From NCBI GenBank assembly GCA_965112155.1, contig OZ218101.1: a DNA stretch of 64,000 bases. One strand, given 5' to 3'. The notes beneath the pieces are model-generated. The model searched no databases. It saw nothing but the letters and a program-made list of their open reading frames with translations, and was not told where the DNA came from. The DNA comes from Podarcis liolepis. Lineage: Eukaryota. Below, one piece after another: positions 4,568 through 61,852 of the stretch. Each line of letters opens with the position of its first letter. Within the stretch, counting starts at the first letter, position 1. Both the position numbers and the translations under genes were made by a program.

Positions 4568-5019
4568 GTGTTGTTGTTTAGTCGTTTAGTCGTGTCCGAC
4601 TCTTCGTGACCCCATGGACCAGAGCACGCCAGGCACTCCTGTCTTCCACTGCCTCCCACAGTTTGGTCAAACTCATGCTGGTAGCTTTGAGAACACTGTC
4701 CAACAATCTCATCCTCTGTCGTCCCCTTCTCCTTGTGCCCTCAATCTTTCCCAACATCAGGGTCTTTTCCAGGGAGTCTTCTCTTCTCACGAGGTGGCCA
4801 AAGTACTGGAGTCTCAGCTTCAGGATCTGTCCTTCCAGTGAGCACTCAGGGCTGATTTCCTTAAGAATGGAGAGGTTTGACCTTCTTGCAGTCCATGGGA
4901 CTCTCAAGAGTCTCCTCCAGCACCATAATTCAAAAGCATCAATTATTCGGCAATCAGCCTTCTTTATGGTCCAGCTCTCACTTCCATACATCACTACTGG
5001 GAATCACTATATACATCAC
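4568..5019 (-). mobile_element. BovB LINE 3' fragment
   Basis: Minus-strand ORF 4578-4994 is nearly identical to the copy at 73-599. (TTG)n tail. TSD TATATAAATT at 4558-4567 and 5020-5029. Confidence 0.95.
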
Positions 5020-7527
5020 TATATAAATTAGTATCTCATAAAATAAAGTCAGATGTGGTATAACTCAATTCCAGTGATCTAGGGGGAATGGAATAATAAA
5101 GAGATCAGGATTTTCCAAAGGCACGTACATGGGTGTTTCCATGTGCAAAGGATATGGTATTCAGCAATTACATTAGGTGTGAATTTGACGCCAAAAGGGG
5201 CTTACAGGCTGGTTGTCAGGTCTGCCAGAGGGCTTTGAAAGGCACTTTGTAAGCTGTGCATTTGCCTGCACAGTTTGATCTCAAACAGTACAGGCAAAAA
5301 GGGTTATCTGATATCATAGTGACACCTGTCAAATTTGTCCCTCAGAGCTGGGGGAAATAATGATCTGATCTCCTGACCAAATCCAGATCCCCACCCCTTT
5401 TATAAATGGCATAAGTATCCCTGAGGCTGCAATACCCACAGTGGAACTGACTGCTGAGAAGACATGACTAGGAGTGCACCATAAGTCTTCCTTAGTCTGT
5501 GATGGTCTGAGTTGAAAAGATGATTATATAAAACAGGGAAGGAAACTCAATCCACAAACATTTTTGTGGCACATCTACACAAAGTACAGCACTGATCTGG
5601 CTAGGTTTCCATGTGATGGTGCCCTAAGGGCCAAAGAAGACATAACAGGGACAAAACTGTTCAACAAAGCAAAATTGATTCTTTAAAACAACAGCAGGAG
5701 TGGAGTGGTTCTGATTTTTAGAGCAAAAGTAGTATGTGGGTCAGAGGACCCAAATAACTTCAGATTTATGGTTCCAACTTGGTCTTCAAAAGACTTGAAG
5801 GCTGCAGAATTTCTTTAACCATCCTTAGCTTCCCTGCAGTCTCTCACCCCAACACCTATCTCTCAACCAAATTCACTTATTGGAATCTTGGTGACAGACT
5901 GGGGGAGGGGGTAGTCATGGGAAGGGAAGACATTTTGCTATCCATGCCTCTCCTGCTCTAAAATTAGACACACCCACTTCATCAGTATCTGAAGCAGATC
6001 TGGCTTTAAACCAGGGGACTTCAACACAGCACCCACAGTTGCCCCTGGGTGTGCAAATACTTCCCCTGGTCTAGAAACCTAGGTAATTGTCTTCTGCTGA
6101 GTTTGACCACAGCCCTACCTTGCTCAGTATTGCCTACACTATCAGCAGCTCTCTAAAGTTTCAGCGAGGGTCCTTTTCTATCTCTCTGTGAAGAGGCTAT
6201 GCATCAAACGTGGACCCTTTTACATCCAGTGAGTTGTCAATTCATGAGCTACTGTATTATTTTCATTATTTGTGGGGGGGGGGTTTGAGGAGAGGTTTCA
6301 CTGTTATATGGATCATACTGAAACAGAATCTGGGGTTGTGGCCTGTTTTGCCTTAATGCAGCACTTGAACTTCACAGCACAATATGCACATGATTCTGAA
6401 ACATGATAGTGGCGTTAACTATTTGATCTTCTCACTTCCCCATTCAAACCAAACCATTTCCATCAATAGGACCAAATAGGCTGGATTGCAAGTATTTTGG
6501 GGCTTAATTGGATTGTAGATTGGGCTGCCCATTACAGAGCCCTACTTACTTTCACAGTGCTGGAAATGGGAGTGCAAGTTTGCTGTGCCCTTTCTACGCG
6601 CTTTGACAAACCGGGTGAGTTTTTGAGACATAACGTTAAGGGGAGAAAGGGAGAGAAATCAAGGCCTGCAAAAATCCTTACACTTATTTGTTTCTTCTTT
6701 CCCCAACCCATCTGTAAACATTTTGTTTTATCCATTTTCCTAATGATTTCATTGACAGGCAACTTCAAAAGGCAAGCTCCAGCCTTCTTGTTGTACAGGC
6801 TGCAAAGGGATCTGTCACCCTCAGCAAGCCTCCCTGCCACGAGCCATTTATCGCAACAAAAGGCACCGTGTTAACGACATGGCTCATCATCAGTCAGTCC
6901 TGGTGCAGAAGATGTCAAATCCACTGCTGGAGAACAAGGATAATGTGGTCTTTGCTTTTTTTGAAATGAAGAGATGGCAGGGGCTGGGAAGAAAGTCATC
7001 GGCAAATTGGTTGATGATTCTCTCCACCGTCAATCCCCACCGCTGACCCCATTTTGTGCGAGAAGGTTCGCCGGCTTCTTAAATCGACTTGGACGTTTTA
7101 TTCTCCCCTTTAAATATTTGAAGGAAGAATGTAAACAGATAATATCTCCGTAGCGAGCTGTAGAAAAGGTTGCTTTCGGTTGAACGTTCCTGGCAAAATG
7201 CAGAAATTAAAAATAACTGTACAAGCTGATGCTGGGAATCCCCCACACATTACGTCCCTTTTGAGAAAGTGGTGTGGAAGAAGGAATTGTCCTCCCAGGC
7301 CCAATCATGTTGACAGACAGACAAGAAATAAATTGCATTACAGGGTGGCTATGCTTGGCCCATGGTTCTCACACAAATTGCCACTGTGAAGCGGTGTCTG
7401 TCAGTCTTAGTTTTGTGCAGAAATCTGGGCTTCGGTTTCTCAGTTTTCTTCATTTGCAAAAGGGGCCTCCATTTTCCTGTCCTACTCTCAGGGTACCTTA
7501 TGGTTGTGGGGTAACCCAAGGGTCTTT

Positions 7528-23344: not shown

Positions 23345-23958
23345 NNNNNNNNNNNNNNNNNNNNNNNNNNNNNNNNNNNNNNNNNNNNNNNNNNNNNNNN
23401 NNNNNNNNNNNNNNNNNNNNNNNNNNNNNNNNNNNNNNNNNNNNNNNNNNNNNNNNNNNNNNNNNNNNNNNNNNNNNNNNNNNNNNNNNNNNNNNNNNNN
23501 NNNNNNNNNNNNNNNNNNNNNNNNNNNNNNNNNNNNNNNNNNNNNNNNNNNNNNNNNNNNNNNNNNNNNNNNNNNNNNNNNNNNNNNNNNNNNNNNNNNN
23601 NNNNNNNNNNNNNNNNNNNNNNNNNNNNNNNNNNNNNNNNNNNNNNNNNNNNNNNNNNNNNNNNNNNNNNNNNNNNNNNNNNNNNNNNNNNNNNNNNNNN
23701 NNNNNNNNNNNNNNNNNNNNNNNNNNNNNNNNNNNNNNNNNNNNNNNNNNNNNNNNNNNNNNNNNNNNNNNNNNNNNNNNNNNNNNNNNNNNNNNNNNNN
23801 NNNNNNNNNNNNNNNNNNNNNNNNNNNNNNNNNNNNNNNNNNNNNNNNNNNNNNNNNNNNNNNNNNNNNNNNNNNNNNNNNNNNNNNNNNNNNNNNNNNN
23901 NNNNNNNNNNNNNNNNNNNNNNNNNNNNNNNNNNNNNNNNNNNNNNNNNNNNNNNNNN
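23345..23958. other. Assembly gap (N run)
   Basis: Continuous Ns. Confidence 1.
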
Positions 23959-43856: not shown

Positions 43857-44085
43857 NNNNNNNNNNNNNNNNNNNNNNNNNNNNNNNNNNNNNNNNNNNN
43901 NNNNNNNNNNNNNNNNNNNNNNNNNNNNNNNNNNNNNNNNNNNNNNNNNNNNNNNNNNNNNNNNNNNNNNNNNNNNNNNNNNNNNNNNNNNNNNNNNNNN
44001 NNNNNNNNNNNNNNNNNNNNNNNNNNNNNNNNNNNNNNNNNNNNNNNNNNNNNNNNNNNNNNNNNNNNNNNNNNNNNNNNNNNNN
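43857..44085. other. Assembly gap (N run)
   Basis: Continuous Ns, located between the two divergent genes. Confidence 1.
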
Positions 44086-46642: not shown

Positions 46643-46730
46643 ATGGTAGCCACTCTAGGATTTGCTGACACAGTTCGGCTCATTGTTCTGTTGTACTCTA
46701 TTTTCTACAGAACCTTTGGACAGGAGGAGG
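46643..46730 (+). CDS. CSF2RA-like exon: signal peptide
   Basis: 88 nt; [29 protein letters not shown]; Kozak-like AGCATGG, AGG|gtaagt phase-1 donor, possible upstream acceptor at 46628. Confidence 0.75.
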
Positions 46731-49700
46731 GTAAGTATATATTTTCAAGTTGATTAGCAGGTTATATTGCAGATATTAATATTGCAGAGATCAAAGTGGC
46801 TGGGTGCATAAGAACTGACTACTTTTGGAAATAAACATTGTCCAATCCCGTAAAAATATTATTCAAAGCTTACTTGCAGAAATTTTTCGAGAACAGAACA
46901 AAATACATCAAATGATACATCCAAAACATCCGTGCAATGTCTTGTGCTGTCCAGCACAGGCTCAGCATCTTAGAAATGAAAGATAATTCCAAAAATCCAA
47001 ACTGTATCTCTGTTCCACATTCCAGCCCCCAGTGGCCTTAGCCTGTGCATTTCTTTTGGTGAGCCATCTACATCCTTTTGTTCTTTGTGGCATCCAGAGA
47101 AAGGCTAAAAGCCACCATTCTTTCAAGATGGTGATTTTACAACTCAGTAACTTCATCACATGCTCAAAGGTTACATTAGAGTAACAGGATACATTAGAGA
47201 AACAGAAAACACTCAGTGGGTAATTATTGTCCCATTTAGGAGCTTAGAGTACTTTAGAAAACTTGGGGGAAATCCAAATTAGAGATACACATTTATCCAT
47301 TCTCCATGTTAAACTATCATTAATACACGGGCATTTGCTCATTTCTGTGTAAATAAAACCAATTACTGTATACTTAACAGATGATACCGGTATACAGGTA
47401 TATGAGTCATTCATTCCTATACCAGCATGTTTGAGTACAGAACTGCTGCCAGGGTATGCATAACTCTGGTGACAAGGGGTGTGATATGGGGTTAGCATTC
47501 TGACCTCATATTGATTGAATTTAGAACACCCTAGGGTGAACATTGGTAATGGAACTTGTAGAGAAACACCACTTGACCTTAAAAAGGAATCACTTTCATA
47601 GAATCATAGAAATGTAGAGTTTGAAGGGACACCGAGGGTCGTCTAGTACAGCCCCCTGCAATGCAGGAATAAGAGCTGAAGAATCCCTGACAGATGGTCA
47701 TTCCATCTCTGGTTAAATGTCTCCAGTGAAAAAGAGTCCACCACCTTCCAAGGTAGTCCATTCTATTGTCCAACAGCTCTTGCCATCAGAAAGTTCTTCT
47801 TCATGTTTAGTCGAACCTCATTCAAACTTATAGGATGAGCACATTAACTTAAGGTTACCAGATTTTTTTCAATGAATCTAGGGGCACTTTTCAACCAATG
47901 GATTTTGTATGGGTACTGATTTGTAAATCTGGTGACTGTCCTTGGGAAACGGGGATGTCTGGTAACCTTACATTAACTCTTCTCAGAAGAACCCATGCAG
48001 GCAGCGGCGGAGCAAGCCGATCGGGTGCCTGGGGTGGCGAGCGTGCCCTGTACCCAGCCGGGACAGGACGCTCTGCAGGGCCTCCAAGGAGTCTGCCTGC
48101 CTCCTCCCACTCAGCTGCCCTACAGCTGAGGGGGAGGCAGTGGGCAGACTGTTTGGGCCGAGCGGAGCCTGCAGGTGCCCAAGCCACCGTGTCACTTCCA
48201 GGAGAGACGTGTGGCTCGGGAGCGCTGCAGGCCCTGCAGTGAATGCCACCCAGCATTTTGTCACCCCCTTCAATGGTGACACCTGGGCGGATCGCACCTA
48301 CCTGCACCCCCCTTCCTTCACCCCTGCATGCAGCTACTCAGACTCAGAACCAAACTCATGTACATGGATGACACATATATGAGATGATGATAAAAGTACT
48401 CTGAGCATTTCAATGCATGTTACTAAACATGATCTTTCCTAATTTTTCTCCCCAGGACTGGAAGGGACATCAGCTGAAAATTTATCCTGTGTCATTTACA
48501 CAGTTCATGTTACCTCAATGGATTGCACTTGGGATGCTGGCAGGAATGCCCCTAATGACGTCCAGTATTTTCTCAACTTGATATATTTGTAATTCATTTT
48601 CATTTGTTAAACGGGGGTGGGGAAGGGAATGGTTAGAGTATGCTACTCCTGGTTGGATTTTTAACAAAATATTTTTGCATGCAGCGAAAACGATGGAGAA
48701 AGCATTGAATGTCCCCAATACAAAAATAATGAACTTGGAAGACATGTTGGGTGCCATTTTCCTAATATGAAAGTTCCTGAGAATCATATTACCCTCCAGG
48801 TGACTGGCTCAAGCAAAGAATCACCAATTCAGACTTTGGATCACCAAGCCTGGCCTTTCGATTATGGTAAGAGAGGGTGGAGTATATTGGTTTACTTTTT
48901 TCTGCCAGCAGTACTAGAAATTTTGATATAGCTATAAATCTGGGATGGGAAAATGTGGCCTCAATATTAGATTCTGACTCCCATCGCCACTGATCACAGG
49001 TTAGGTTGGCTGGGGCTGCTGGGAGTCCAACCACATCTGGAGAGTCAGATGTCGTGCAACCCTTTAATAGGCCTTTACTTTAAAATGCTTGTAAAATTAT
49101 CATTAAACAACCTCAAAAACATATCTGACTGCTTCTACATCACAGCTTTTCAGTGGCAGATACACCCACCCCCATCCTGTACCCTTGCATGACCTCACAC
49201 CATAACATTCCTGGCTATAAACCTGGCCACACTCACCCATAGTGTATGTGAATCTAAAATATTTAAGAGAGGGATGGAAGACTGACCACTCTAATGCCCT
49301 TGTAATCTCTACCGTCAAGTAAAAGATGGGTTATTTCATTCCAGAAAAACTTGCCCCACCGCAATTTATCACTGTGAATTGTCGTGAACTGCTATTGTAT
49401 TGTAAAGTAGAATGGAAACATCCTCCAACTGCTACTACAAATGCAGATTACTGTTTTAAGTACCAGATAAAGGTAAGAGGCCATTGTGGTTCTCTTCGTT
49501 GAATTGTTTTTTGTCATCTTTGCTCGTCCCATGTGCATATTTCAATTAGACATCCAAAGGGGGGGGGGATGACCATTTCACATTCTGAAATTGTTATGAG
49601 TTGAATAGAATCCAAAATGCAGCAGTCTGATTGGTCCGCAGGAGCCACCCAATCCAGCTCCAGGTGGAAGTGAATCCACAACCTGATTGGCCTACAGGAG

Positions 49701-52700
49701 AATCCTGGAATTAGCCAATCACATGCAGCCCATTGTGTAAATAATGTATATAAAGCAGATATTTGGGGGGAACTTTCATTCCTCCTCACCACTATGAGCT
49801 GAATAAAGAGCATGAAATCCACTCTTGGCTCCGAGTATATTTCAGAAATATGTCCAGCTTTCAAATGTATATAGAATTCAGTTTTGCAGAGGACCCAGTA
49901 CTGCTACTCTGGGATTGGTGAGGCACATGAGGAATCAACAAGATTCAACAAGATGGATGGGCTAAGAGAAAAGGGTCTAGCTGCAGTGTAGAATTACCAT
50001 CAGCAAAATGCCCCAAGCCAATCCTGTTTGTCATGTCAAACAGTGGAGCAAAGAAAGGATTGGGAGGAAAGTTAAACCATCTACCCACAAGTAAGTCACA
50101 GACACATGTAATCAATTGCTGTTGACAACTTTTGCCTTCCTTGCTGATTAAAGTATCCAGCTGAATTTGTGAAATCAAGCATACTTTGAAAAAACCACAA
50201 AGAAAAATTGACACCAGTACCAACTAAAAATGTTACCTTTTTCCCTTAAGGATGTACTGAGAAATGGAATTATAACAGTAAGTATTGTTACTCTATATAA
50301 ACACTTACACATGGGGGAATGAATTTAGGAATGAGACAGCCACGTGTATGTTGCTGTGGGTTACATACTGGAAGAAAAATGGGGTATAAATGCGCGGTAT
50401 AGTAAAATTTGGTCACAACGTTCTGAAATAGGGCCAGTCTAGAAGTTCTATCTAGGTGTCTCCCTGTTTGTTTTGTTTTTTTAATCTACTTTGCTTTCTG
50501 ATGTCTTCTAATCTGGGTTAAAGGGATGCGGGTGGTGCTGTGGGTTAAAACCACAGAGCCTAGGACTTGCCAATCAGAAGGTCTGTGGTTCAAATCCCCA
50601 CAACAGGGTGAGCTCCCGTTGCTTGGTCCCTGCTCCTGCCAACCTAGCAGTTTGAAAGCATGTCAAAGTGCAAGTAGATAAATAGGCGCCGCTCCGGTGG
50701 GAAGGTAAACGGCATTTCCATGTGTTGCTCTGGTTCACCAGAAGTGGCTTAGTCATGCTGGCCACATGACCCGGAAGCTGTACCCCGGCCCCCTCGGCCA
50801 ATAAAATGAGATGAGCACCACAACCCCAGAGTCAGTCAGGACTGCACCTAATGGTCAAGGGTCCCTTTGTTGTTGTTGTTTAGTCATTTAGTCGTGTTCG
50901 ACTTTTCGTGACCCCATGGACCAGACCATGCCAGGCACTTCTGTTTTCCACTGCCTCCCGCAGTTTGGTCAGACTCATGTTTGTAGCTTCAAGAACACTG
51001 TCCAACCATCTCGTCCTCTGTCGTCCCCTTCTCCTTGTGCCCTCCATCTTTTCCAACATCAGGGTCTTTTCCAGGGAGTCTTCTCTTCTCATGAGGTGGC
51101 CAAAGTATTGGAGCCTCAGCTTCATGATCTGTCCTTCCAGTGAGCACTCAGGGCTAATTTCCTTAAGAATGGATGCGTTTGATCTTCTTGCAGTCCATGG
51201 GACTCTCAAGAGTCTCCTCCAGCACCATAATTCAAAAGCATCAATTCTTCGTCGATCAGCCTTCTTTATGGTCCAGCTCTCACTTCCATACATCACTACT
51301 GGGAAAACCATGGCTTTAACTATACGGATCCCTTTACCTTTACCTAAAGGGTCCCTTTACCTTTACCTAATCTGGGTTAATGATAGATGGCTGGTGAAAG
51401 AGGCAGAGAAGGGAAAATCTCCCAGGGTGGGAGACTGGGAACATATAGAGGGAATCTCCCAGGTAAGAGCTGGGAGGGTCCACCCCCTTCTGTGTGAGAC
51501 AAAGGTTAAGATATGCTTATGAGAGAGGCCTTTGTATCCTCCACCCATTTCTATCTCTATTATTTCTATTATTTCTATTATTTTCTATTTCTATTTCTAT
51601 TTCTATTATTTCTATTTCTATTATTTCTATTTCATTTCCCTTTTTTCTTTTTATTCAGATTAGTTTGCTTTTTAATGTATGGTATAATGAAACATTTTAA
51701 TAAAAATTTCATGGCAAACCCCCTCCCCACATGAAGGCTTGGGAGAATCACAGAAGTAAGGCTGTGGACCATAGTTTGAATTGGCTATACATACTCAGGT
51801 AAATCTAGGAAGGACCACAGTTCTCCTCTCCCTTGCCCTTAAGACAAACATATTGTGACTTTTCTTGAGTTTCGACTTCTAATCTCTTAATAGTAGTTGT
51901 AAAACCGAAGAATTATTAATATCCTGCTACTGAGCATATTTACCTAAAAGGCAGCTATAGTGATTTTCCAAGGGGAAAGTATTTTCCTAGTGAGTGAATT
52001 AAGGCAGCAGCTTGTTGAATGCTTTTGCACAAGAGAAATAGCCGTCTTTACATTACACAGTGGAATTGGGTGGGCACCACTAATACTATTTAAAAAATCA
52101 AATCGTTCAATGCAAATTGGCATGTAACTTCACCTACAAAGGAATAAACCAGATTAATATCTTCCTTTTAAGAAAAAAACTGGGAAAACCTACCACTTGT
52201 TTCCGAAGGATAAAGAATACATCTTGAAGCTTCGTGCAGCTGGACAGTATTGCACTGTTGGAGAAGAATGGAGTGACTGGAGTGAACTAATTAAATTTGG
52301 TAAGGTTACAGATTTTTCTCTCTCCATGTTCTTCTTCCTTTGCCCTGATCTCTATCATACTGCCTAAGTGGCTAACTCAGGTTTGAGAAGTGCCTCTATC
52401 AGTTTGGGAAACAAGGCAATCGAAAATGGTTTTTTGCACATTAAACAACATCCTTGGTATTCAGAAATATATATGGGGTTTTTTTTTTAAAAAAATCATT
52501 GTTTAATAAACAAAAACAGCTTATTCTTCCAGTTTCCAAGATTTATGGAGACCTGTGTCAGGTATCAGGGAATCCGATCCCCCCACCCCCACGGTAGGCT
52601 GCCAGGAACAGATAGACAAAGAAAGTTCTTACCAATGTCTTTTATTCAATATTCACAGAGAGAGGCTTAGAAATGCAGCCTCTTGGAGTAATGGCATTGT

Positions 52701-53717
52701 TCCGAGTAATCTCCACCCCCTCTCTTCTCTCCTCAATCGTCAGCAGCAGCACCCACCCTACGGTAGCTGCTTAGGGCCATTTGCCTCCAAGCCCTTTGCT
52801 CTCCTACTTTCAATGTTCACCGGGTTCTGGGAGAAGGAGTGTCTGGAATGCTTTCTAGTAATAATGCGTCAGCCAGCTGTTCTGGCTCTGCCTCCTCCTC
52901 CTCCTCCTCTTCCTCTTCCTCTTCCATTATTCCCTAACTTTGCCCCTCATCTGTTTCTGAGCCGTTACCTTCCACAAACCACCGCTGTAAATCTATACTG
53001 GCTTCCTCTTCTCTGGAAGGTTCAGGAAGAGGGAGAAGCGGTCTCCACCATTCCTCCTCTGTCCAGTCCCTGACAACTTGATGCCAGTTGAGTCTACTTA
53101 CTTATTATTTATTTATTTCATGGAAAATATACACTGCTTGCTTGTAAATAAAACCTTAAATCAGTTCACACACACACACACACAAATATTTATTAAATTT
53201 TGATACCACCCTTCAGTCAAGGGTCACCGAGTGATATAAAAATATAAAATATAAAATATATAAACATAAAAATATGTAACATAGTAACAAAGACAGTTTA
53301 AAAGGCCATAGATTGTTTAATTAGCCAAAGGAATTTAGTTTGGTCACACAAAATCCGCTCCCAGTTAGTCAAAGCTTTCTTTATCTGAACAGTGTAATTT
53401 TGGACCAGAGGGTGAATCATTTTGTTGATCCTACTGTTTGGAGTCAGAAAATTTCAAATGGACAGTCCCCTTTAACTCCAATGGGATTATTCTAGGGTAC
53501 AAAGTTTAGAGCTTTCACTTTCCAATAGGTGAAGGCTGCAACGCTTACCTTACTTATATGAGAGCATTCCCCCTTGCTATTTTGTAACAGAACTTGATGT
53601 TTTGTAACAATTGTCACTGGATTTTCAGGATGCAGAAAGAAACCAGGAAAGAATACATACACCTGTGAAGAAAACAATGCTAAAAGATGGATCACATCAA
53701 CAAAATATTTACCATAG
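46643..53717 (+). CDS. CSF2RA: GM-CSF receptor alpha-like (CSF2RA/IL3RA family) gene, predicted secreted form of ~257 aa
   Basis: Exons 46643-46730, 48456-48588, 48685-48866, 49345-49472, 50251-50277 and 52173-52299 are all GT-AG, in phase and free of stops. A candidate last exon is 53629-53717. Motifs [36 protein letters not shown]...[19 protein letters not shown] and [11 protein letters not shown] match human CSF2RA. Family is certain; orthologue versus lineage-specific paralogue is not. Confidence 0.8.
47597..47812 (-). mobile_element. CR1 LINE 3' end
   Basis: CATAGAATCATAGAA tail followed by typical CR1 3' sequence. Confidence 0.8.
47851..47970. mobile_element. Short hAT-like MITE
   Basis: Inverted ends AAGGTTACCAGA / TCTGGTAACCTT. 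Near-identical flanks CATTAACT on both sides suggest an 8-bp TSD. Confidence 0.75.
48456..48588 (+). CDS. CSF2RA-like exon: cytokine-binding domain, first half
   Basis: 133 nt; [44 protein letters not shown]; strong acceptor, gtaatt donor. Confidence 0.93.
48685..48866 (+). CDS. CSF2RA-like exon: cytokine-binding domain, second half
   Basis: 182 nt; [60 protein letters not shown]; gtaaga donor. Confidence 0.93.
49345..49472 (+). CDS. CSF2RA-like exon: membrane-proximal FNIII, first half
   Basis: 128 nt; [43 protein letters not shown]; AAG|gtaaga donor. Confidence 0.93.
49586..49844 (+). mobile_element. ERV-type solo LTR
   Basis: TGAAAT...ATTTCA inverted termini, several CCAAT/ATTGG boxes, TATATAAA at ~49747 and AATAAA at 49802. 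No clear TSD. Confidence 0.7.
50251..50277 (+). CDS. CSF2RA-like 27-nt microexon
   Basis: cctttttcccttaag|GAT...ACA|gtaagt, phase 0-0, DVLRNGIIT. Sits where human CSF2RA has a short exon inside the second FNIII domain. Confidence 0.8.
50522..51366 (+). mobile_element. Sauria SINE carrying a nested BovB in its tail
   Basis: 14-bp TSD CTAATCTGGGTTAA at 50508-50521 and 51367-51380 encloses the SINE body, the BovB and the ACCTTT tail. Confidence 0.9.
50869..51328 (-). mobile_element. BovB LINE 3' fragment
   Basis: ORF 50880-51311. TSD TCCCTTT at 50862-50868 and 51329-51335. Confidence 0.95.
51548..51635. repeat. (TTTCTA/TTA)n simple repeat
   Basis: Seen directly. Confidence 0.9.
52173..52299 (+). 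CDS. CSF2RA-like exon: WSXWS exon
   Basis: 127 nt; [43 protein letters not shown]; phase-1 gtaagg donor. Confidence 0.93.
52556..53075 (-). mobile_element. Solo LTR (520 bp)
   Basis: TGTCAGG...CCTGACA inverted termini, 5-bp flanks ACCTG/ACTTG, AATAAA on the minus strand near 52645. Confidence 0.85.
53629..53717 (+). CDS. CSF2RA-like candidate terminal exon (hydrophilic, stop)
   Basis: ttttcag acceptor. In phase 1 it reads [29 protein letters not shown]. Unique AT-rich sequence follows, then AATAAA at 54011. No homology support. Confidence 0.45.
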
Positions 53718-54117
53718 TCATGCAAAGTCAAGAGTTGAAAACTTCTATGGAAACCTGAGACCTGAAGATATAGGGTGGCATACAAATTTATTAATAATAA
53801 GTCACTGAGATTTCTTGCTGCAAGTGGTGTTCATTAACTTATGTCCGAGTTCCATCGTGAAATGTATCAGGTTTAACAGTATGCCATAGAGCTCACAAGC
53901 AAATTTGTGATTCTTTCAGAAATATATTTCATATATTTTTGTACCATAATGGAAGATCTGTATCTTATAAAGTTTTCATTGTCTGTACAATGGATAACCA
54001 AGCAGCTACCAATAAAGAGATCAAGAGTTATGCAAACAAAATGTATCTGATGTTTCCCTCAGTGATTTGGAAAAGGGACAGGTTGAACTATTATATGATA
54101 CTCACTATTTTCCTTTA

Positions 54118-54479: not shown

Positions 54480-55524
54480 TATTTTCCTTTAACCCAGTCG
54501 ACCCAAATCAAATAGTTGGTGTGGCTGTGGCTGTCCATAGTACCTATCAGGGGCCATATTTGACATAATGCAAGTTAATTCAACCAGGGTGTAACAGGTG
54601 TATTATTTATTTGGAAAATTGCACACCTTAAAATTTCCTTTAGCTATCCTTTGCCAGAACTTTCCTCAAAGTGGGCTCAAAAAAGCAGGGTGACAATGTT
54701 ACTGTGTTAGAGGTGAACAGACTGGCAAAATGCAAGACTGCCATTTCTCCGTGTCAAGAAAGTGCACAAAGTAAATGGGTTATGTATTTTTGAAAGGTGA
54801 ACCAAGGTGAGGTGACCTGCCTCAGGCAGCAGGATCCACAGGAAACCTTTCCTTTCAAAATTGTTTTTGCGGGTCTTTGTACTGTCATAAAGAATGTGTG
54901 TTCACTTCCTCTTTCCTGGAGGGGAGGGACGTCAATTTGTTGTTTGCCTCAGGTGTCAAAATGTCTTGGGCCAGCCCTGTTGAAAGGCAGTGTCCACAAA
55001 GGGCCCTGGCCTAACATTTTTTCCTCCGAGGCTACCCAGTGTTTTCGTACCGTCATCAACCTAAGAGAGGTTTAATGAAGCTTAAAAGCATATAGCATAT
55101 TGTTTAGGAGTACCCCATCTCCTTCCATTGGGTTTTTCATACAGAATTTTCCATGCCATGTGTGGATCAAGCATTGTAGATCAAGCACTGAATCAAATGA
55201 AGTGGATTAGCTTCTGCACACCTACAAATTAAGCTTTCAAAACAGGTATTTTAAAAGGAAATTCACTTCAATTGCCAGACAGCTTTGTAACAGTCATCTG
55301 TCATCTGCAGATATTTTCATCCATAAAACCACACCGTCAGAGCCAGCAAAATTATGCAACACTGGCTTGTTAAGAGGCTTTCCTCATCAGATAATGATAA
55401 TCATGCTTGCAGAGAGATCTACAGTATTCTTTAGACTGTGGTGCAGTATAAATATTTTAATCACTTGGGAGTGATCTCTGAGTGTTGTGAGCTTTCAGGG
55501 ATTGCACTTACCCAGGGTTCATAT

Positions 55525-55830: not shown

Positions 55831-57454
55831 AAAAAACTTGATCATTTTGATTTCTTATTCTTCCGATGAAAACCAGCAGCGCAATGAAAGGGAAGCGCTG
55901 CCACGGCTGCATTTGACCCCGCCCCCAAGCCTCCACCTGATTGGCGGGCTGCCAGGGGGCATGGCGCAGCAGCCCCGGGCAGCTGAGCAGGGGCCAGAAC
56001 ACCCCCTGCCAATGTGGGAAATGGCTCCCGCTCACAACTCCTCCCCTCTGGAAGGAGGAGAGGCTTTGCCTTTATAGCTAACAAATAACAAGGCACAGGT
56101 TTTGAAAAGGGCAAAATTGGAGCTGTGCTGCTCTGATGGTCGGTTTCTGTGGCTCTCTGGGCTTTTCGATCACCCACACAGGTCAATATGTTGTTCCATC
56201 TCTCTACTTTTTTCTTTTAGAATGGCCATTGTAAATAGTCATCATGACACTGTCTGTACTTTTCTCACCTTACTGTTTCATAATTCTACCCAGCCAGCTT
56301 TACATGTAGCTACACATCAGGATAATGCTTCATGCATCCGAAGACATGGACTTTTGTATGCCATCTTCCCCATTACAAATGGCCCAGAATTTTCCCCTCC
56401 CTTTACTTTCTCCATCTTCATACTCTCTCAAACACATACATTTTCTTTCTCTTCCCCCCTTGGCCTGTCTAGACATAAGGAGGTCAGGGTTTTCTTTTCC
56501 CGAATCAGAGAAGCCAAACCCACAGACACAAGTTATCCAGAAAGCTTTACCTTCCTCTTCCCCTCCCACACCAGCAAAATAATGATTTTGTGGCACCACT
56601 CCTCTCGTTAAATAAGCAATTCATAACACTCCAGCTTAATGAAGCCTATCTGGAAATGTGGGGGTGGGGGTAGAGGAGGTGGTTCACATTAGCATGAGAC
56701 TGGCCAAATATATCCTTCTCAGTAAGCAAGCACAAAAGATTGTTGATAAGTAAAAAATAAGTTTTGGCTGTCTACACCAATGAAATTTATCTGATGGCAA
56801 TGTTCAAGGGATTCCACAAGGCAAAAATCTGAATCTGTTACTCCTTTAAGAGAAATTGCAGCAGTGCATTTGAATGTCCTGCAGATGTAAAATAAATGCC
56901 CCCATGTCTCTATTTTCCTTCATTTTCCAATGGCATTCAGATCAGCTTTTTCCTTTTTCCAGATATAAATCATTAAGATTTCAGGAGGCTTTGGCCGAAA
57001 TAGAGGCGGTACAGATTACCTCCCCTCACACACAACTGCAACTTTTTAACTATATGGCACACATGACCATCACAAAATAATTAGATTTGTTTCATGAACA
57101 ATCCTGCCAGTGTTTTTCTGTGTGTGTGCATATCTATCTATCTAATCACTCTAGGACTTTTGCCACCCTGAATACTGCACATCTGAAAGTACTTTGACTC
57201 ATGAAACATCTTCCAAACTTCCTAAGGAGATATTCCATTTAAACATTCTCAGAACCCAGTGTTAAAGCAGTGACCAGTGTATGCTGCTATTCCCAAGCTG
57301 AACCAGGGCCAGCACTTTGGACAGGAGCCAAGGTCTCAGTGCTGTAGCACGGCACACTCCAGGGCCCCCTTATTGTGTTTTCTGACCAGGCACTTTTGGA
57401 AGCTGGATGCAGCTGCTCTTTTAATTTCCTACCACGGCCCCAGCTCTAAGAGTT

Positions 57455-60722: not shown

Positions 60723-61852
60723 ATCGTTTGGATAAAAGTACTAGCTAAATTTGCACCTGTACATATATATTAGCAAAAGTAAATTTGATGGCAATGCATA
60801 AGTGCAAGGGGCAGCCCATCCCATTTCGCCGCCTGAGGCAAAACAGGAAAGTGTCCCTAGCCGAAGCCTTGCTTACCCTGCTTGCACAGCAGTGGCTTCC
60901 AGGGAGATCTCTCCTACTGCTCTGCATTCCCCAGTGGTGGTAGGGGCAGCCGGGGTCCCTGTGTGGGCACTGCCCCATGGGATTCCACTGTCCAAGATGG
61001 CTGCTTCAGCCTGCCTCGTGGGCAGGACAGCCCTGCATAAGTGGCGACCCTTCCCCATTCCTAGTCTTCTGCTGGACCAGTGGGCCAGGAACACTCTGGA
61101 AAGAATGGCTTCTGTGGTTTGCTTGTATAAAACTGGAAACAATAAAACTATCCAACATCTTTTTTTAAAAAAAAACCACCAGGCCTTTATTATTTCTGAG
61201 GCTCCTTGTGTATGGCAGCACTCCATTGCCCACCCAGTGTCCTATCACTACCCTGAAAAAAATCTGATTGCATTAACAAAACCTCCCCTCCACTATCATA
61301 TCCTCATGCCACACCTACTGCTAACAGGGGCAGGCACTTATCCTATCTGGAAACAGGTCCTCTGGCTACAGCAAGGGCTGTAGCTTAGTGGCAGAGCATC
61401 TGTTCTGTATGCAAAACATCTGGGCTGAGGTGGGAGAGAAACTTGCCTTCAGCCCCAGAATGCCACTGTCAGTCAGTGTAGATAATTCTGATGTAAATGA
61501 ATCAATGGTCTGACTCAGTAGAAGGCAGCTTTCTGAGCTCCTATGCTTCTTCCTAACAATGGTTATAATATAAGCTCCCTCGCATAGAAATAAGTATTTT
61601 CCACTTAACATGCTCCAAATTAGGTTATTGTCCTGTCTTTGACAGAGTGAATCACTGAACTCCAAGTCAGGGCTCTCAAAATGGCTGTGTCACATCAGAG
61701 CTTCTCTATGTTCCTATCAGACCAGAGGAGCTTTGCTCATAACCCAGCCAACCACTTCTCACCAGTTCCTTTTCTCTTCTCAGTAAGAAAGCTCCGCCTT
61801 TGCCCTGCTCCCTTCCACGACTCTGTCTGAGGCTTATAAATAAGCCTTTAGG

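What the first reader, a model, noticed from the sequence alone, without database searches (positions are those of the whole stretch)
46643..54030. Predicted secreted decoy receptor of the GM-CSF/IL-3/IL-5 alpha-chain family, encoded by its own gene
Six exons give an uninterrupted signal peptide plus the two-domain cytokine-binding module, with the four conserved cysteines and WSDWS. That intactness argues against a pseudogene. I found no convincing transmembrane exon or Box1 (FPP.P) exon in the 11.7 kb after the WSXWS exon, although the gene's other introns are under 2 kb. The nearest plausible endings are both soluble. One is splicing to 53629 (GCRKK...YLP*, AATAAA at 54011, 257 aa). The other is reading through the donor ([28 protein letters not shown] at 52505). 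Mammals make soluble GM-CSFR alpha and IL-5R alpha by alternative splicing. A dedicated minimal secreted paralogue at the CSF2RA position would suggest a lizard cytokine-buffering system, with the signalling copy further downstream. Novelty is unverified.
Basis: partly seen in the sequence, partly recalled or inferred. Interest (0 to 1): 0.85.

Follow-up and report, generated by a model that had tools for sequence, protein, structure and literature searches.

The report
Transmembrane-less GM-CSF-receptor-like paralogue in wall lizards
This wall-lizard gene is a duplicated copy of a GM-CSF-receptor-like gene that keeps the signal peptide and cytokine-binding module but has no membrane anchor within reach, so it probably makes a secreted binding protein; it is already in public annotations, and neither its expression nor its function is shown.

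Summary
Six GT-AG exons (46643-52299, + strand) encode a signal peptide and a two-domain cytokine-binding module with four conserved cysteines and WSDWS. By sequence and by predicted fold it lies closest to human GM-CSFR alpha, then IL-5R alpha and IL-3R alpha.

No homologue of a transmembrane or Box1 exon exists anywhere in the 64 kb window.

The gene is not new to databases. A 15-nt indel at 53670 explains 244 versus 257 aa.

Lacertids have two sister paralogues. Copy A (about 311 aa) has a transmembrane segment and Box1. This gene is copy B, which has neither. The duplication is lacertid-specific.

Copy B's ectodomain changes no faster than A's, and its exons differ less than its introns between species (3/562 versus 32/2157, p about 0.05). 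That argues against long neutral decay.

Against function: three RNA runs of a congener show no reads on the exons. Public models give three different 3' ends. Full-length B models come only from Podarcis.

My verdict is a real transmembrane-less paralogue and a plausible secreted decoy, with function unproven. This scan noted the same stretch once before (s1-843545).

The parts
46643..46730 (+). Exon 1: start codon and signal peptide; donor GT at 46731; ends in phase 1
   Evidence: It is 28/29 identical to the Podarcis and Zootoca copy-B models. AlphaFold models it as a low-confidence helix at residues 7-26, as expected of a signal peptide.
48456..48588 (+). Exon 2: first half of cytokine-binding domain 1, with the first cysteine pair
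   Evidence: IL6Ra-bind, E 1.2e-6; C41 and C53 invariant.
48685..48866 (+). Exon 3: second half of domain 1, with the second cysteine pair
   Evidence: best PDB matches IL-5R alpha and GM-CSFR alpha. It is 60/60 identical in three other Podarcis species.
49345..49472 (+). Exon 4: first half of domain 2
50251..50277 (+). Exon 5: 27-nt micro-exon within domain 2
   Evidence: It is homologous to the same segment in paralogue A and in Anolis.
52173..52299 (+). Exon 6: second half of domain 2, with WSDWS; strong donor G|GTAAGG; ends in phase 1
   Evidence: It aligns to the WSSWS...EFG end of the human GM-CSFR alpha ectodomain.
53629..53717 (+). Terminal coding exon used by public 244-aa models. In this window it adds 29 residues including the split glycine, with the stop at 53715-53717.
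   Evidence: P0001 and P0020 end with the first 15 residues of this exon at 100% identity. The acceptor is a pyrimidine tract followed by CAG.
53670..53671 (+). Site of a 15-nt indel. Another Podarcis carries 15 extra bases here that create an earlier stop (...CEEG*), which gives 244 aa instead of 257.
   Evidence: table 4: 16.5 of 33.6 depth carries the insertion. The resulting reading frame was worked out.
53718..54030 (+). Putative 3' UTR, with AATAAA at 54011-54016
   Evidence: No RNA reads were available to confirm the end.
52300..52510 (+). Alternative read-through ending: 22 extra residues, stop at 52364-52366, AATAAA at 52505. Nothing supports it.
   Evidence: No public model uses it and no reads cover it.
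54873..54890 (+). Counterpart of the 5-aa terminal mini-exon of the P. muralis 182-aa RefSeq model (exon 4 joined to VFVLS*). Here the acceptor position reads GG, not AG.

Best explanation
This is copy B of a pair of lacertid paralogues of the squamate two-domain GM-CSFR-alpha-like receptor. A duplication in the lacertid lineage produced two copies. Copy A has a transmembrane helix and a Box1 tail. Copy B has the promoter-proximal exons only: a signal peptide and a two-domain cytokine-binding module. B ends in a short improvised terminal exon with its own poly(A) signal. The product would therefore be a protein of about 26 kDa that enters the secretory pathway and is released. It could bind the same or a related beta-common-family cytokine as copy A. 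Without the alpha-chain cytoplasmic Box1 region it cannot start signalling, so it would act as a competitor, that is a decoy or buffer. Shown here: the gene structure, the family membership, the fold, the absence of transmembrane and Box1 exons in the window, the duplication history, and a rate of change no higher than that of copy A. Inferred, not shown: secretion, ligand binding and antagonism. My odds are about 0.75 that no transmembrane exon belongs to this gene, and about 0.45 that it is a working secreted binder.
For: The exons are intact with canonical splice sites. The best sequence match is human GM-CSFR alpha at E 7e-27, then IL-5R alpha and IL-3R alpha. The AlphaFold model of the 97%-identical orthologue P0020 has pLDDT 82.6. 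Its top Foldseek hits are 4rs1_B, 3qt2 and 5uv8. No transmembrane or Box1 homologue is in the window, and there are no gaps downstream. Two separate pipelines, RefSeq for P. raffonei and the P. lilfordi annotation, give the same transmembrane-less 244-aa protein with the 52299-to-53629 splice. The P. lilfordi pipeline combined RNA-seq, Iso-Seq, protein and ab initio evidence. All four public copy-B models lack a transmembrane segment, and all full-length copy-A models have one together with Box1. A and B are sister clades (support 90/98), with Rhineura outside them. B's ectodomain differs by 5/229 residues between P. lilfordi and P. raffonei, against 16/229 for A. Between Zootoca and Podarcis, exons 1-3 differ by 11-12/134 for B and 15-18/132 for A. 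Against another Podarcis, exons show 3/562 differences and unique non-exon sequence 32/2157 (Fisher one-sided p 0.049). Under neutral change of 6-10% per site, an open frame of 225 codons would survive with probability well under 1%. Soluble GM-CSFR alpha antagonises GM-CSF in humans (PMC2699419).
Against: About 36 million sampled reads from two bulk and one single-cell RNA run of a congener left zero depth on exons 2-7, apart from one read in exon 2. The tissues of those runs are unknown. The 3' end is unstable across species. Podarcis raffonei and lilfordi models have 244 aa. P. muralis has 182 aa, ending after exon 4. Zootoca has 146 aa, ending after exon 3. A 15-nt indel moves the stop codon. 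No copy-B model of 134 aa or more turned up for Lacerta agilis, although its copy A is annotated. The exon-versus-intron contrast is marginal, and it depends on a truncated difference list; with 4 exon differences p rises to 0.11. Synonymous rates could not be measured.
Confidence: 0.5

Rival explanations
1. Copy B is a partial duplicate on its way to becoming a pseudogene. It may be transcribed at a low level, its 3' ends are makeshift and differ by species, and its product has no role.
For: No RNA reads fell on the exons in three runs. Public models give three different 3' structures: 244, 182 and 146 aa. The stop codon shifts through a 15-nt indel. One species has an odd extra cysteine at residue 142 of the 244-aa model, and that position has three states (F, Y, C) among four Podarcis. 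No full-length copy B is annotated outside Podarcis.
Against: All six exons keep an open frame and canonical splice sites, although the duplication predates the Zootoca-Podarcis split. The ectodomain changes more slowly than that of the signalling paralogue. Exon 3 is identical in four Podarcis. Exons differ less than introns. Neutral survival of the frame is unlikely.
Confidence: 0.3
2. Copy B is a signalling receptor after all. Exon 6 splices to a transmembrane exon more than 11.7 kb downstream, outside the window, possibly to the 3' exons of paralogue A.
For: Exon 6 ends in phase 1 with a strong donor, as in relatives where a transmembrane exon follows. A tandem two-module model with one transmembrane segment exists in another species (P0005).
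Against: All other introns of the gene are under 2 kb. Annotations of three species keep B and A as separate genes, and no model joins B's module to A's tail. Two models end B at 53629 and following. In P. lilfordi one accession number lies between B and A.
Confidence: 0.12
3. Copy B is secreted but acts as an agonist partner, in the manner of EBI3, IL-12 p40 or CRLF1. It would form a composite cytokine, or present ligand to the beta common chain on cells that lack copy A.
For: The anatomy is the same as for the decoy reading: signal peptide plus cytokine-binding module and no anchor. Several soluble receptor-like genes in the wider class I family work this way; this rests on my own knowledge.
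Against: In this family the alpha chain's cytoplasmic Box1 region is needed for signalling, and the soluble human form antagonises (and my own knowledge). Nothing here tests it.
Confidence: 0.06

Closest known systems
Human GM-CSF receptor alpha (CSF2RA), soluble splice isoform
   Same: It is the best sequence match (E 7e-27) and the best fold match (4rs1_B, 35% identity, rmsd 2.3 A). The end of the module aligns, from WSXWS to ...EFG. The human soluble form also lacks the transmembrane segment, ends in a short unrelated tail and antagonises the ligand.
   Different: The human soluble form comes from alternative splicing or shedding of the one signalling gene. Here a separate paralogue lacks the transmembrane and Box1 exons. 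The lizard protein also lacks the N-terminal third domain (IL3Ra_N), as do its membrane-bound squamate relatives.
Lacertid paralogue A (for example XP_028583614.2 of P. muralis and CAI5772185.1 of P. lilfordi, about 311 aa)
   Same: It is the sister gene. It is about 62% identical over exons 1-6 and has the same exon pattern, including the 27-nt micro-exon, the same cysteines and WSDWS.
   Different: A continues into a transmembrane helix and a Box1-like proline-rich (P-x-P) tail. B does not. A's ectodomain changes faster between species.
IL-22 binding protein (IL22RA2) and other soluble receptors encoded by their own genes (IL-18BP, CRLF1, EBI3)
   Same: Each is a stand-alone gene that encodes only a signal peptide and the ligand-binding module of a cytokine receptor, and arose by duplication of a membrane receptor. 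This rests on my own knowledge.
   Different: They belong to different receptor families. Their expression and function are established, and copy B's are not.
Anolis carolinensis 'GM-CSF receptor subunit alpha' (XP_016847845.1, 313 aa) and the Rhineura floridana homologue (P0033, 318 aa)
   Same: They have the same two-domain ectodomain without an N-terminal domain, and they are outgroups to the lacertid pair.
   Different: Both carry a transmembrane segment and Box1. No transmembrane-less partner was found for them in my searches.

Membership tests
GM-CSFR/IL-5R/IL-3R alpha chains (class I cytokine receptors that pair with the beta common chain) | Cytokine-binding module of two fibronectin-III-like domains, with four conserved cysteines in the first | tested here: met
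   Pfam IL6Ra-bind matches e2 and e3. C41, C53, C83 and C97 are invariant in 20 relatives. AlphaFold gives two beta-sandwich domains at pLDDT 82.6.
GM-CSFR/IL-5R/IL-3R alpha chains (class I cytokine receptors that pair with the beta common chain) | WSXWS motif at the end of the second domain | tested here: met
   WSDWS lies in exon 6 and aligns to WSSWS of human GM-CSFR alpha.
GM-CSFR/IL-5R/IL-3R alpha chains (class I cytokine receptors that pair with the beta common chain) | Closest solved relatives by sequence and by fold are members of this family | tested here: met
   By sequence: 4nkq_B 7e-27, IL-5R alpha 4e-21, IL-3R alpha 3e-15, then IL-13R alpha 2. Foldseek ranks 1-10 are all GM-CSFR, IL-5R or IL-3R alpha.
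GM-CSFR/IL-5R/IL-3R alpha chains (class I cytokine receptors that pair with the beta common chain) | Extra N-terminal fibronectin-III-like domain (Pfam IL3Ra_N) | tested here: not met
   IL3Ra_N does not match P0020, P0022, P0030 or P0033, though it matches the relative P0012. Relatives that carry the domain find no exon for it in the window. The domain is absent from the whole squamate clade sampled.
GM-CSFR/IL-5R/IL-3R alpha chains (class I cytokine receptors that pair with the beta common chain) | Single transmembrane helix and a membrane-proximal proline-rich Box1 | tested here: not met
   No hit in the window by tblastn or by profile HMM over six frames (best E 0.18). Sequence beyond 64000 was not available.
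GM-CSFR/IL-5R/IL-3R alpha chains (class I cytokine receptors that pair with the beta common chain) | Binds a beta-common-family cytokine and recruits the beta common chain | not testable with these tools
   No lizard cytokine or beta-chain sequence was on hand, and no complex prediction was run.
Soluble (decoy) cytokine receptors encoded by their own genes, IL-22BP type | A gene of its own whose transcripts never include a membrane anchor | tested here: inconclusive
   No transmembrane exon within 11.7 kb, and four public models lack one. No transcript reads could be laid, so the 3' end was not seen.
Soluble (decoy) cytokine receptors encoded by their own genes, IL-22BP type | Expressed and secreted | tested here: inconclusive
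   Exons had zero depth in three RNA runs of a congener, from unknown tissues and with 6-12% of each run read. The signal peptide is inferred from sequence only.
Soluble (decoy) cytokine receptors encoded by their own genes, IL-22BP type | Kept by purifying selection | tested here: inconclusive
   B's ectodomain changes more slowly than A's. Exons versus introns give 3/562 against 32/2157, p 0.049. No synonymous rates were available and the 3' end is unstable.
Soluble (decoy) cytokine receptors encoded by their own genes, IL-22BP type | Neutralises its ligand | not testable with these tools
   This needs binding and cell assays.

The most novel reading that the evidence does not exclude
Wall lizards keep, under selection, a germline gene whose only product is a secreted two-domain GM-CSFR-alpha-like binding module. 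It would be the first soluble alpha chain of the beta-common cytokine family to be encoded by its own gene. It would do by gene duplication what mammals do by alternative splicing or shedding, and it would evolve alongside a fast-changing signalling paralogue.
Probability: 0.35. Interest if true: 0.55.

Novelty: new member of a known kind. Interest (0 to 1): 0.4.

Why it matters
If the protein is made and binds a cytokine, it gives a natural case in which a soluble antagonist was split off into its own gene. Its regulation and evolution could then be studied apart from the signalling receptor. It also offers a way into the poorly known GM-CSF/IL-5/IL-3 system of reptiles, whose receptors here lack the N-terminal domain that mammals use for ligand binding. 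If the gene is a decaying duplicate, it is an ordinary by-product of tandem duplication in a fast-evolving immune locus. Either way the gene model is already public. What is new is the reading and the comparison with paralogue A.

Tried and rejected
- **Contig look-up:** I could not read the orthologous loci, the distance or orientation to paralogue A, or synteny with CSF2RA.
- **Joined model:** Exons were searched one by one by reference. The PDB, Pfam and structure steps used the public orthologue P0020, which is 97% identical over exons 1-6.
- **RNA evidence:** Read laying on 48400-54100 with three RNA runs showed reads only on repeats. This is no evidence for or against expression in other tissues. 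Runs X1-X14, labelled as possible RNA, look like low-coverage DNA and were not used.
- **Hidden transmembrane exon in the window:** rejected.
- **TSLPR/CRLF2 identity:** considered because of the two-domain layout. Rejected, because TSLPR structures are not among the sequence hits at E 0.01, its Pfam D1 models score below their cut-offs for P0020, and the GM-CSFR, IL-5R and IL-3R alpha chains rank first.
- **N-terminal domain exon upstream:** none found.
- **Literature:** searches found no paper on this gene or on soluble alpha-chain paralogues in reptiles.
- **Other look-ups:** earlier scan notes added nothing on neighbouring windows. No complex prediction was run, for lack of a lizard ligand sequence.


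Full report
**Observation**

Exon by exon, the + strand translates without stops. The exons are e1 46643-46730, e2 48456-48588, e3 48685-48866, e4 49345-49472, e5 50251-50277 and e6 52173-52299. Each has an AG acceptor and a GT donor, and the phases fit one another.

Pfam's IL6Ra-bind model matches e2 and e3 above its cut-off. As a single exon, e3 finds IL-5R alpha and GM-CSFR alpha in the PDB. WSDWS sits in e6.

The 27-nt e5 looked doubtful but is real. It aligns with the same short segment in the paralogue and in Anolis.

Both proposed endings are present as written:
- Splicing from 52299 to 53629 gives 257 aa, with the stop at 53715-53717 and AATAAA at 54011.
- Read-through of the donor gives 22 extra residues, with the stop at 52364-52366 and AATAAA at 52505.

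**What the gene is**

I searched 1.84 billion representative proteins with e3, then looked up the clusters. The window comes from a wall lizard (Podarcis, species not named to me), and the gene is already annotated:
- Cluster B holds a 244-aa protein of P. lilfordi (CAI5772183.1) and its counterpart filed under Podarcis, which I take to be P. raffonei (XP_053241252.1). It also holds a 182-aa RefSeq model filed under Podarcis, which I take to be P. muralis (XP_077783924.1), and a 146-aa model of Zootoca vivipara. These carry the names 'IL-5 receptor subunit alpha-like' or 'GM-CSF receptor subunit alpha-like'.
- Cluster A holds proteins of 310-357 aa from Podarcis, Lacerta and Zootoca. These continue after WSXWS...FG into a transmembrane helix and a Box1-like proline-rich (P-x-P) tail.

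The window's exons are 96-97% identical to the Podarcis B models and about 62% identical to A.

A maximum-likelihood tree puts A and B as sister clades inside lacertids (support 90/98). The amphisbaenian Rhineura, Anolis and a cobra fragment lie outside. The duplication is therefore lacertid-specific and older than the Zootoca-Podarcis split.

For whole-protein tests I used the public orthologue P0020:
- Its best solved relatives by sequence are human GM-CSFR alpha (E 7e-27), then IL-5R alpha, IL-3R alpha and IL-13R alpha 2.
- Its AlphaFold model (pLDDT 82.6) shows a helix in the signal-peptide region and two beta-sandwich domains.
- Foldseek ranks GM-CSFR, IL-5R and IL-3R alpha chains first.

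The N-terminal third domain of the mammalian alpha chains is absent. Pfam IL3Ra_N does not match B, A, Anolis or Rhineura. Relatives that have the domain find no exon for it in the window. This is a trait of the squamate clade and not of this gene alone.

**Is there a membrane anchor?**

None lies within the window:
- tblastn with A-type proteins finds exons 1-6 only.
- A profile HMM built from eight transmembrane-plus-Box1 tails was searched against every stop-to-stop fragment of all six frames. Its best E was 0.18, at a place upstream of the gene.
- The few hydrophobic stretches downstream have no usable acceptor or frame.
- There are no assembly gaps after the gene.

The two 244-aa public models end with the first 15 residues encoded at 53629 and following, at 100% identity. 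The P. lilfordi pipeline combined RNA-seq, Iso-Seq, protein alignments and ab initio predictions. I cannot tell which of these supported this particular model.

Reads resolve the difference between 244 and 257 aa. DNA contigs of another Podarcis carry 15 extra bases behind 53670, which create the earlier stop (...CEEG*). About half of the depth at that place has the insertion.

The 182-aa model that I take to be P. muralis joins exon 4 to a five-codon terminal exon. The counterpart of that exon lies at 54873 in the window, but the acceptor position here reads GG.

The 3' end of copy B therefore differs between species, and always without an anchor.

**Expression**

I laid two bulk RNA runs and one single-cell RNA run of a congener on 48400-54100. 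About 12%, 12% and 6% of the runs were read. Exons 2-7 and both endings had zero depth, apart from one read in exon 2. Only the repeats in intron 5 and downstream of exon 6 were covered.

The tissues are unknown, so this does not show that the gene is silent.

**Constraint**

Several lines argue against long neutral decay:
1. All six exons keep frame and splice sites, although the duplication predates the split of the lacertid genera. With the window's own codons, 5.4% of random substitutions would make a stop. At 6-10% neutral change, the chance of keeping the frame free of both stops and frameshifts is well under 1%. The assumed indel rate is my own.
2. B's ectodomain changes no faster than A's:
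   - P. lilfordi against P. raffonei: 5/229 residues for B, 16/229 for A.
   - P. muralis against P. raffonei, exons 1-4: 5/177 for B, 10/178 for A.
   - Zootoca against Podarcis, exons 1-3: 11-12/134 for B, 15-18/132 for A.
3. Exon 3 is identical in four Podarcis.
4. Against the other Podarcis genome, I count 3 differences in 562 exon bases and 32 in 2157 unique non-exon bases. Fisher's one-sided p is 0.049, or 0.11 if one unlisted difference falls in an exon.

Several points weaken this:
- The difference table was truncated.
- Synonymous rates are unknown.
- The terminal exon changes like the flanks.
- Zootoca's model stops after exon 3.
- No B-type protein of 134 aa or more turned up for Lacerta agilis.

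**Mechanism**

The most likely reading is a secreted, anchorless cytokine-binding module that competes with the membrane receptor for a beta-common-family cytokine. The human soluble GM-CSFR alpha isoform does this. The requirement of the alpha chain's cytoplasmic Box1 region for signalling rests on my own knowledge.

The anatomy and the family membership are shown here. Secretion, the ligand and antagonism are inferred.

My odds are:

| Reading | Odds |
|---|---|
| Working secreted binder, acting as a decoy | about 0.45 |
| Duplicate in decay with makeshift 3' ends | about 0.3 |
| Transmembrane exon beyond the window, perhaps borrowed from A | about 0.12 |
| Secreted, but as an agonist partner | the small remainder |

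Summed over these readings, the odds that no transmembrane exon belongs to this gene are about 0.75.

**Novelty**

The protein is already in RefSeq and ENA under '-like' names, so the gene itself is not new. Four literature searches found no description of it, nor of any soluble alpha-chain gene of this family in reptiles.

Soluble cytokine receptors encoded by their own genes are a known kind; IL-22BP is the textbook case. If this one works, it would be a new member of that kind and the first for this receptor family. I score it moderate.

Orthologous DNA, synteny and the position of paralogue A could not be examined.

Noticed in passing
window 53670 (table 4): A 15-nt indel lies in the terminal coding exon. 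Another Podarcis has 15 extra bases here that bring in an earlier stop. Only about half of the depth in that run carries them, so the site may be polymorphic, or two contigs may overlap there.
   Followed up: partly
window 54873-54890: This is the counterpart of the five-codon last exon (VFVLS*) of the 182-aa RefSeq model that I take to be P. muralis. That model skips exons 5-7. In this window the acceptor dinucleotide is GG, so this splice form may not be possible here.
   Followed up: partly
P0021 versus P0002 (Zootoca copies B and A), exon 3 region: The first half of Zootoca copy B's exon 3 shares several residues with Zootoca copy A that the Podarcis B copies lack. This suggests gene conversion between the paralogues, or retained ancestral states.
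   Followed up: no
P0023 versus P0026 (paralogue A, P. lilfordi versus P. raffonei): The signalling paralogue's ectodomain differs at 16 of 229 residues between two congeners, three times the figure for copy B. This could be positive selection on A or a model error in one species.
   Followed up: no
window 50500-51360 (intron 5): A SINE-like element and a LINE fragment lie here (ORFs at 50880-51522, both strands). They draw heavy RNA and DNA read depth from copies elsewhere in the genome. Related fragments are at 25-592 and 4578-5031.
   Followed up: no
window 51540-51650 and 52877-52932: There is a microsatellite of TTTCTA-like units and a CCT/CTT-rich tract. The reads tool skipped both as repeats.
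   Followed up: no
window 23345-23958 and 43857-44085: Two runs of N (assembly gaps or masked sequence) lie upstream of the gene. I left them untouched.
   Followed up: no
window 47990-48330 (intron 1): A GC-rich block of about 340 bases sits inside an otherwise AT-rich intron. GC-rich stretches at 55880-56060 and 60800-61040 look similar by eye, so it may be a dispersed element.
   Followed up: no
P0005 (XP_014119112.1, 484 aa; species not shown): This public model carries two tandem cytokine-binding modules of this family followed by one transmembrane segment. It is either a real tandem-module receptor or a merger of two neighbouring duplicates.
   Followed up: no
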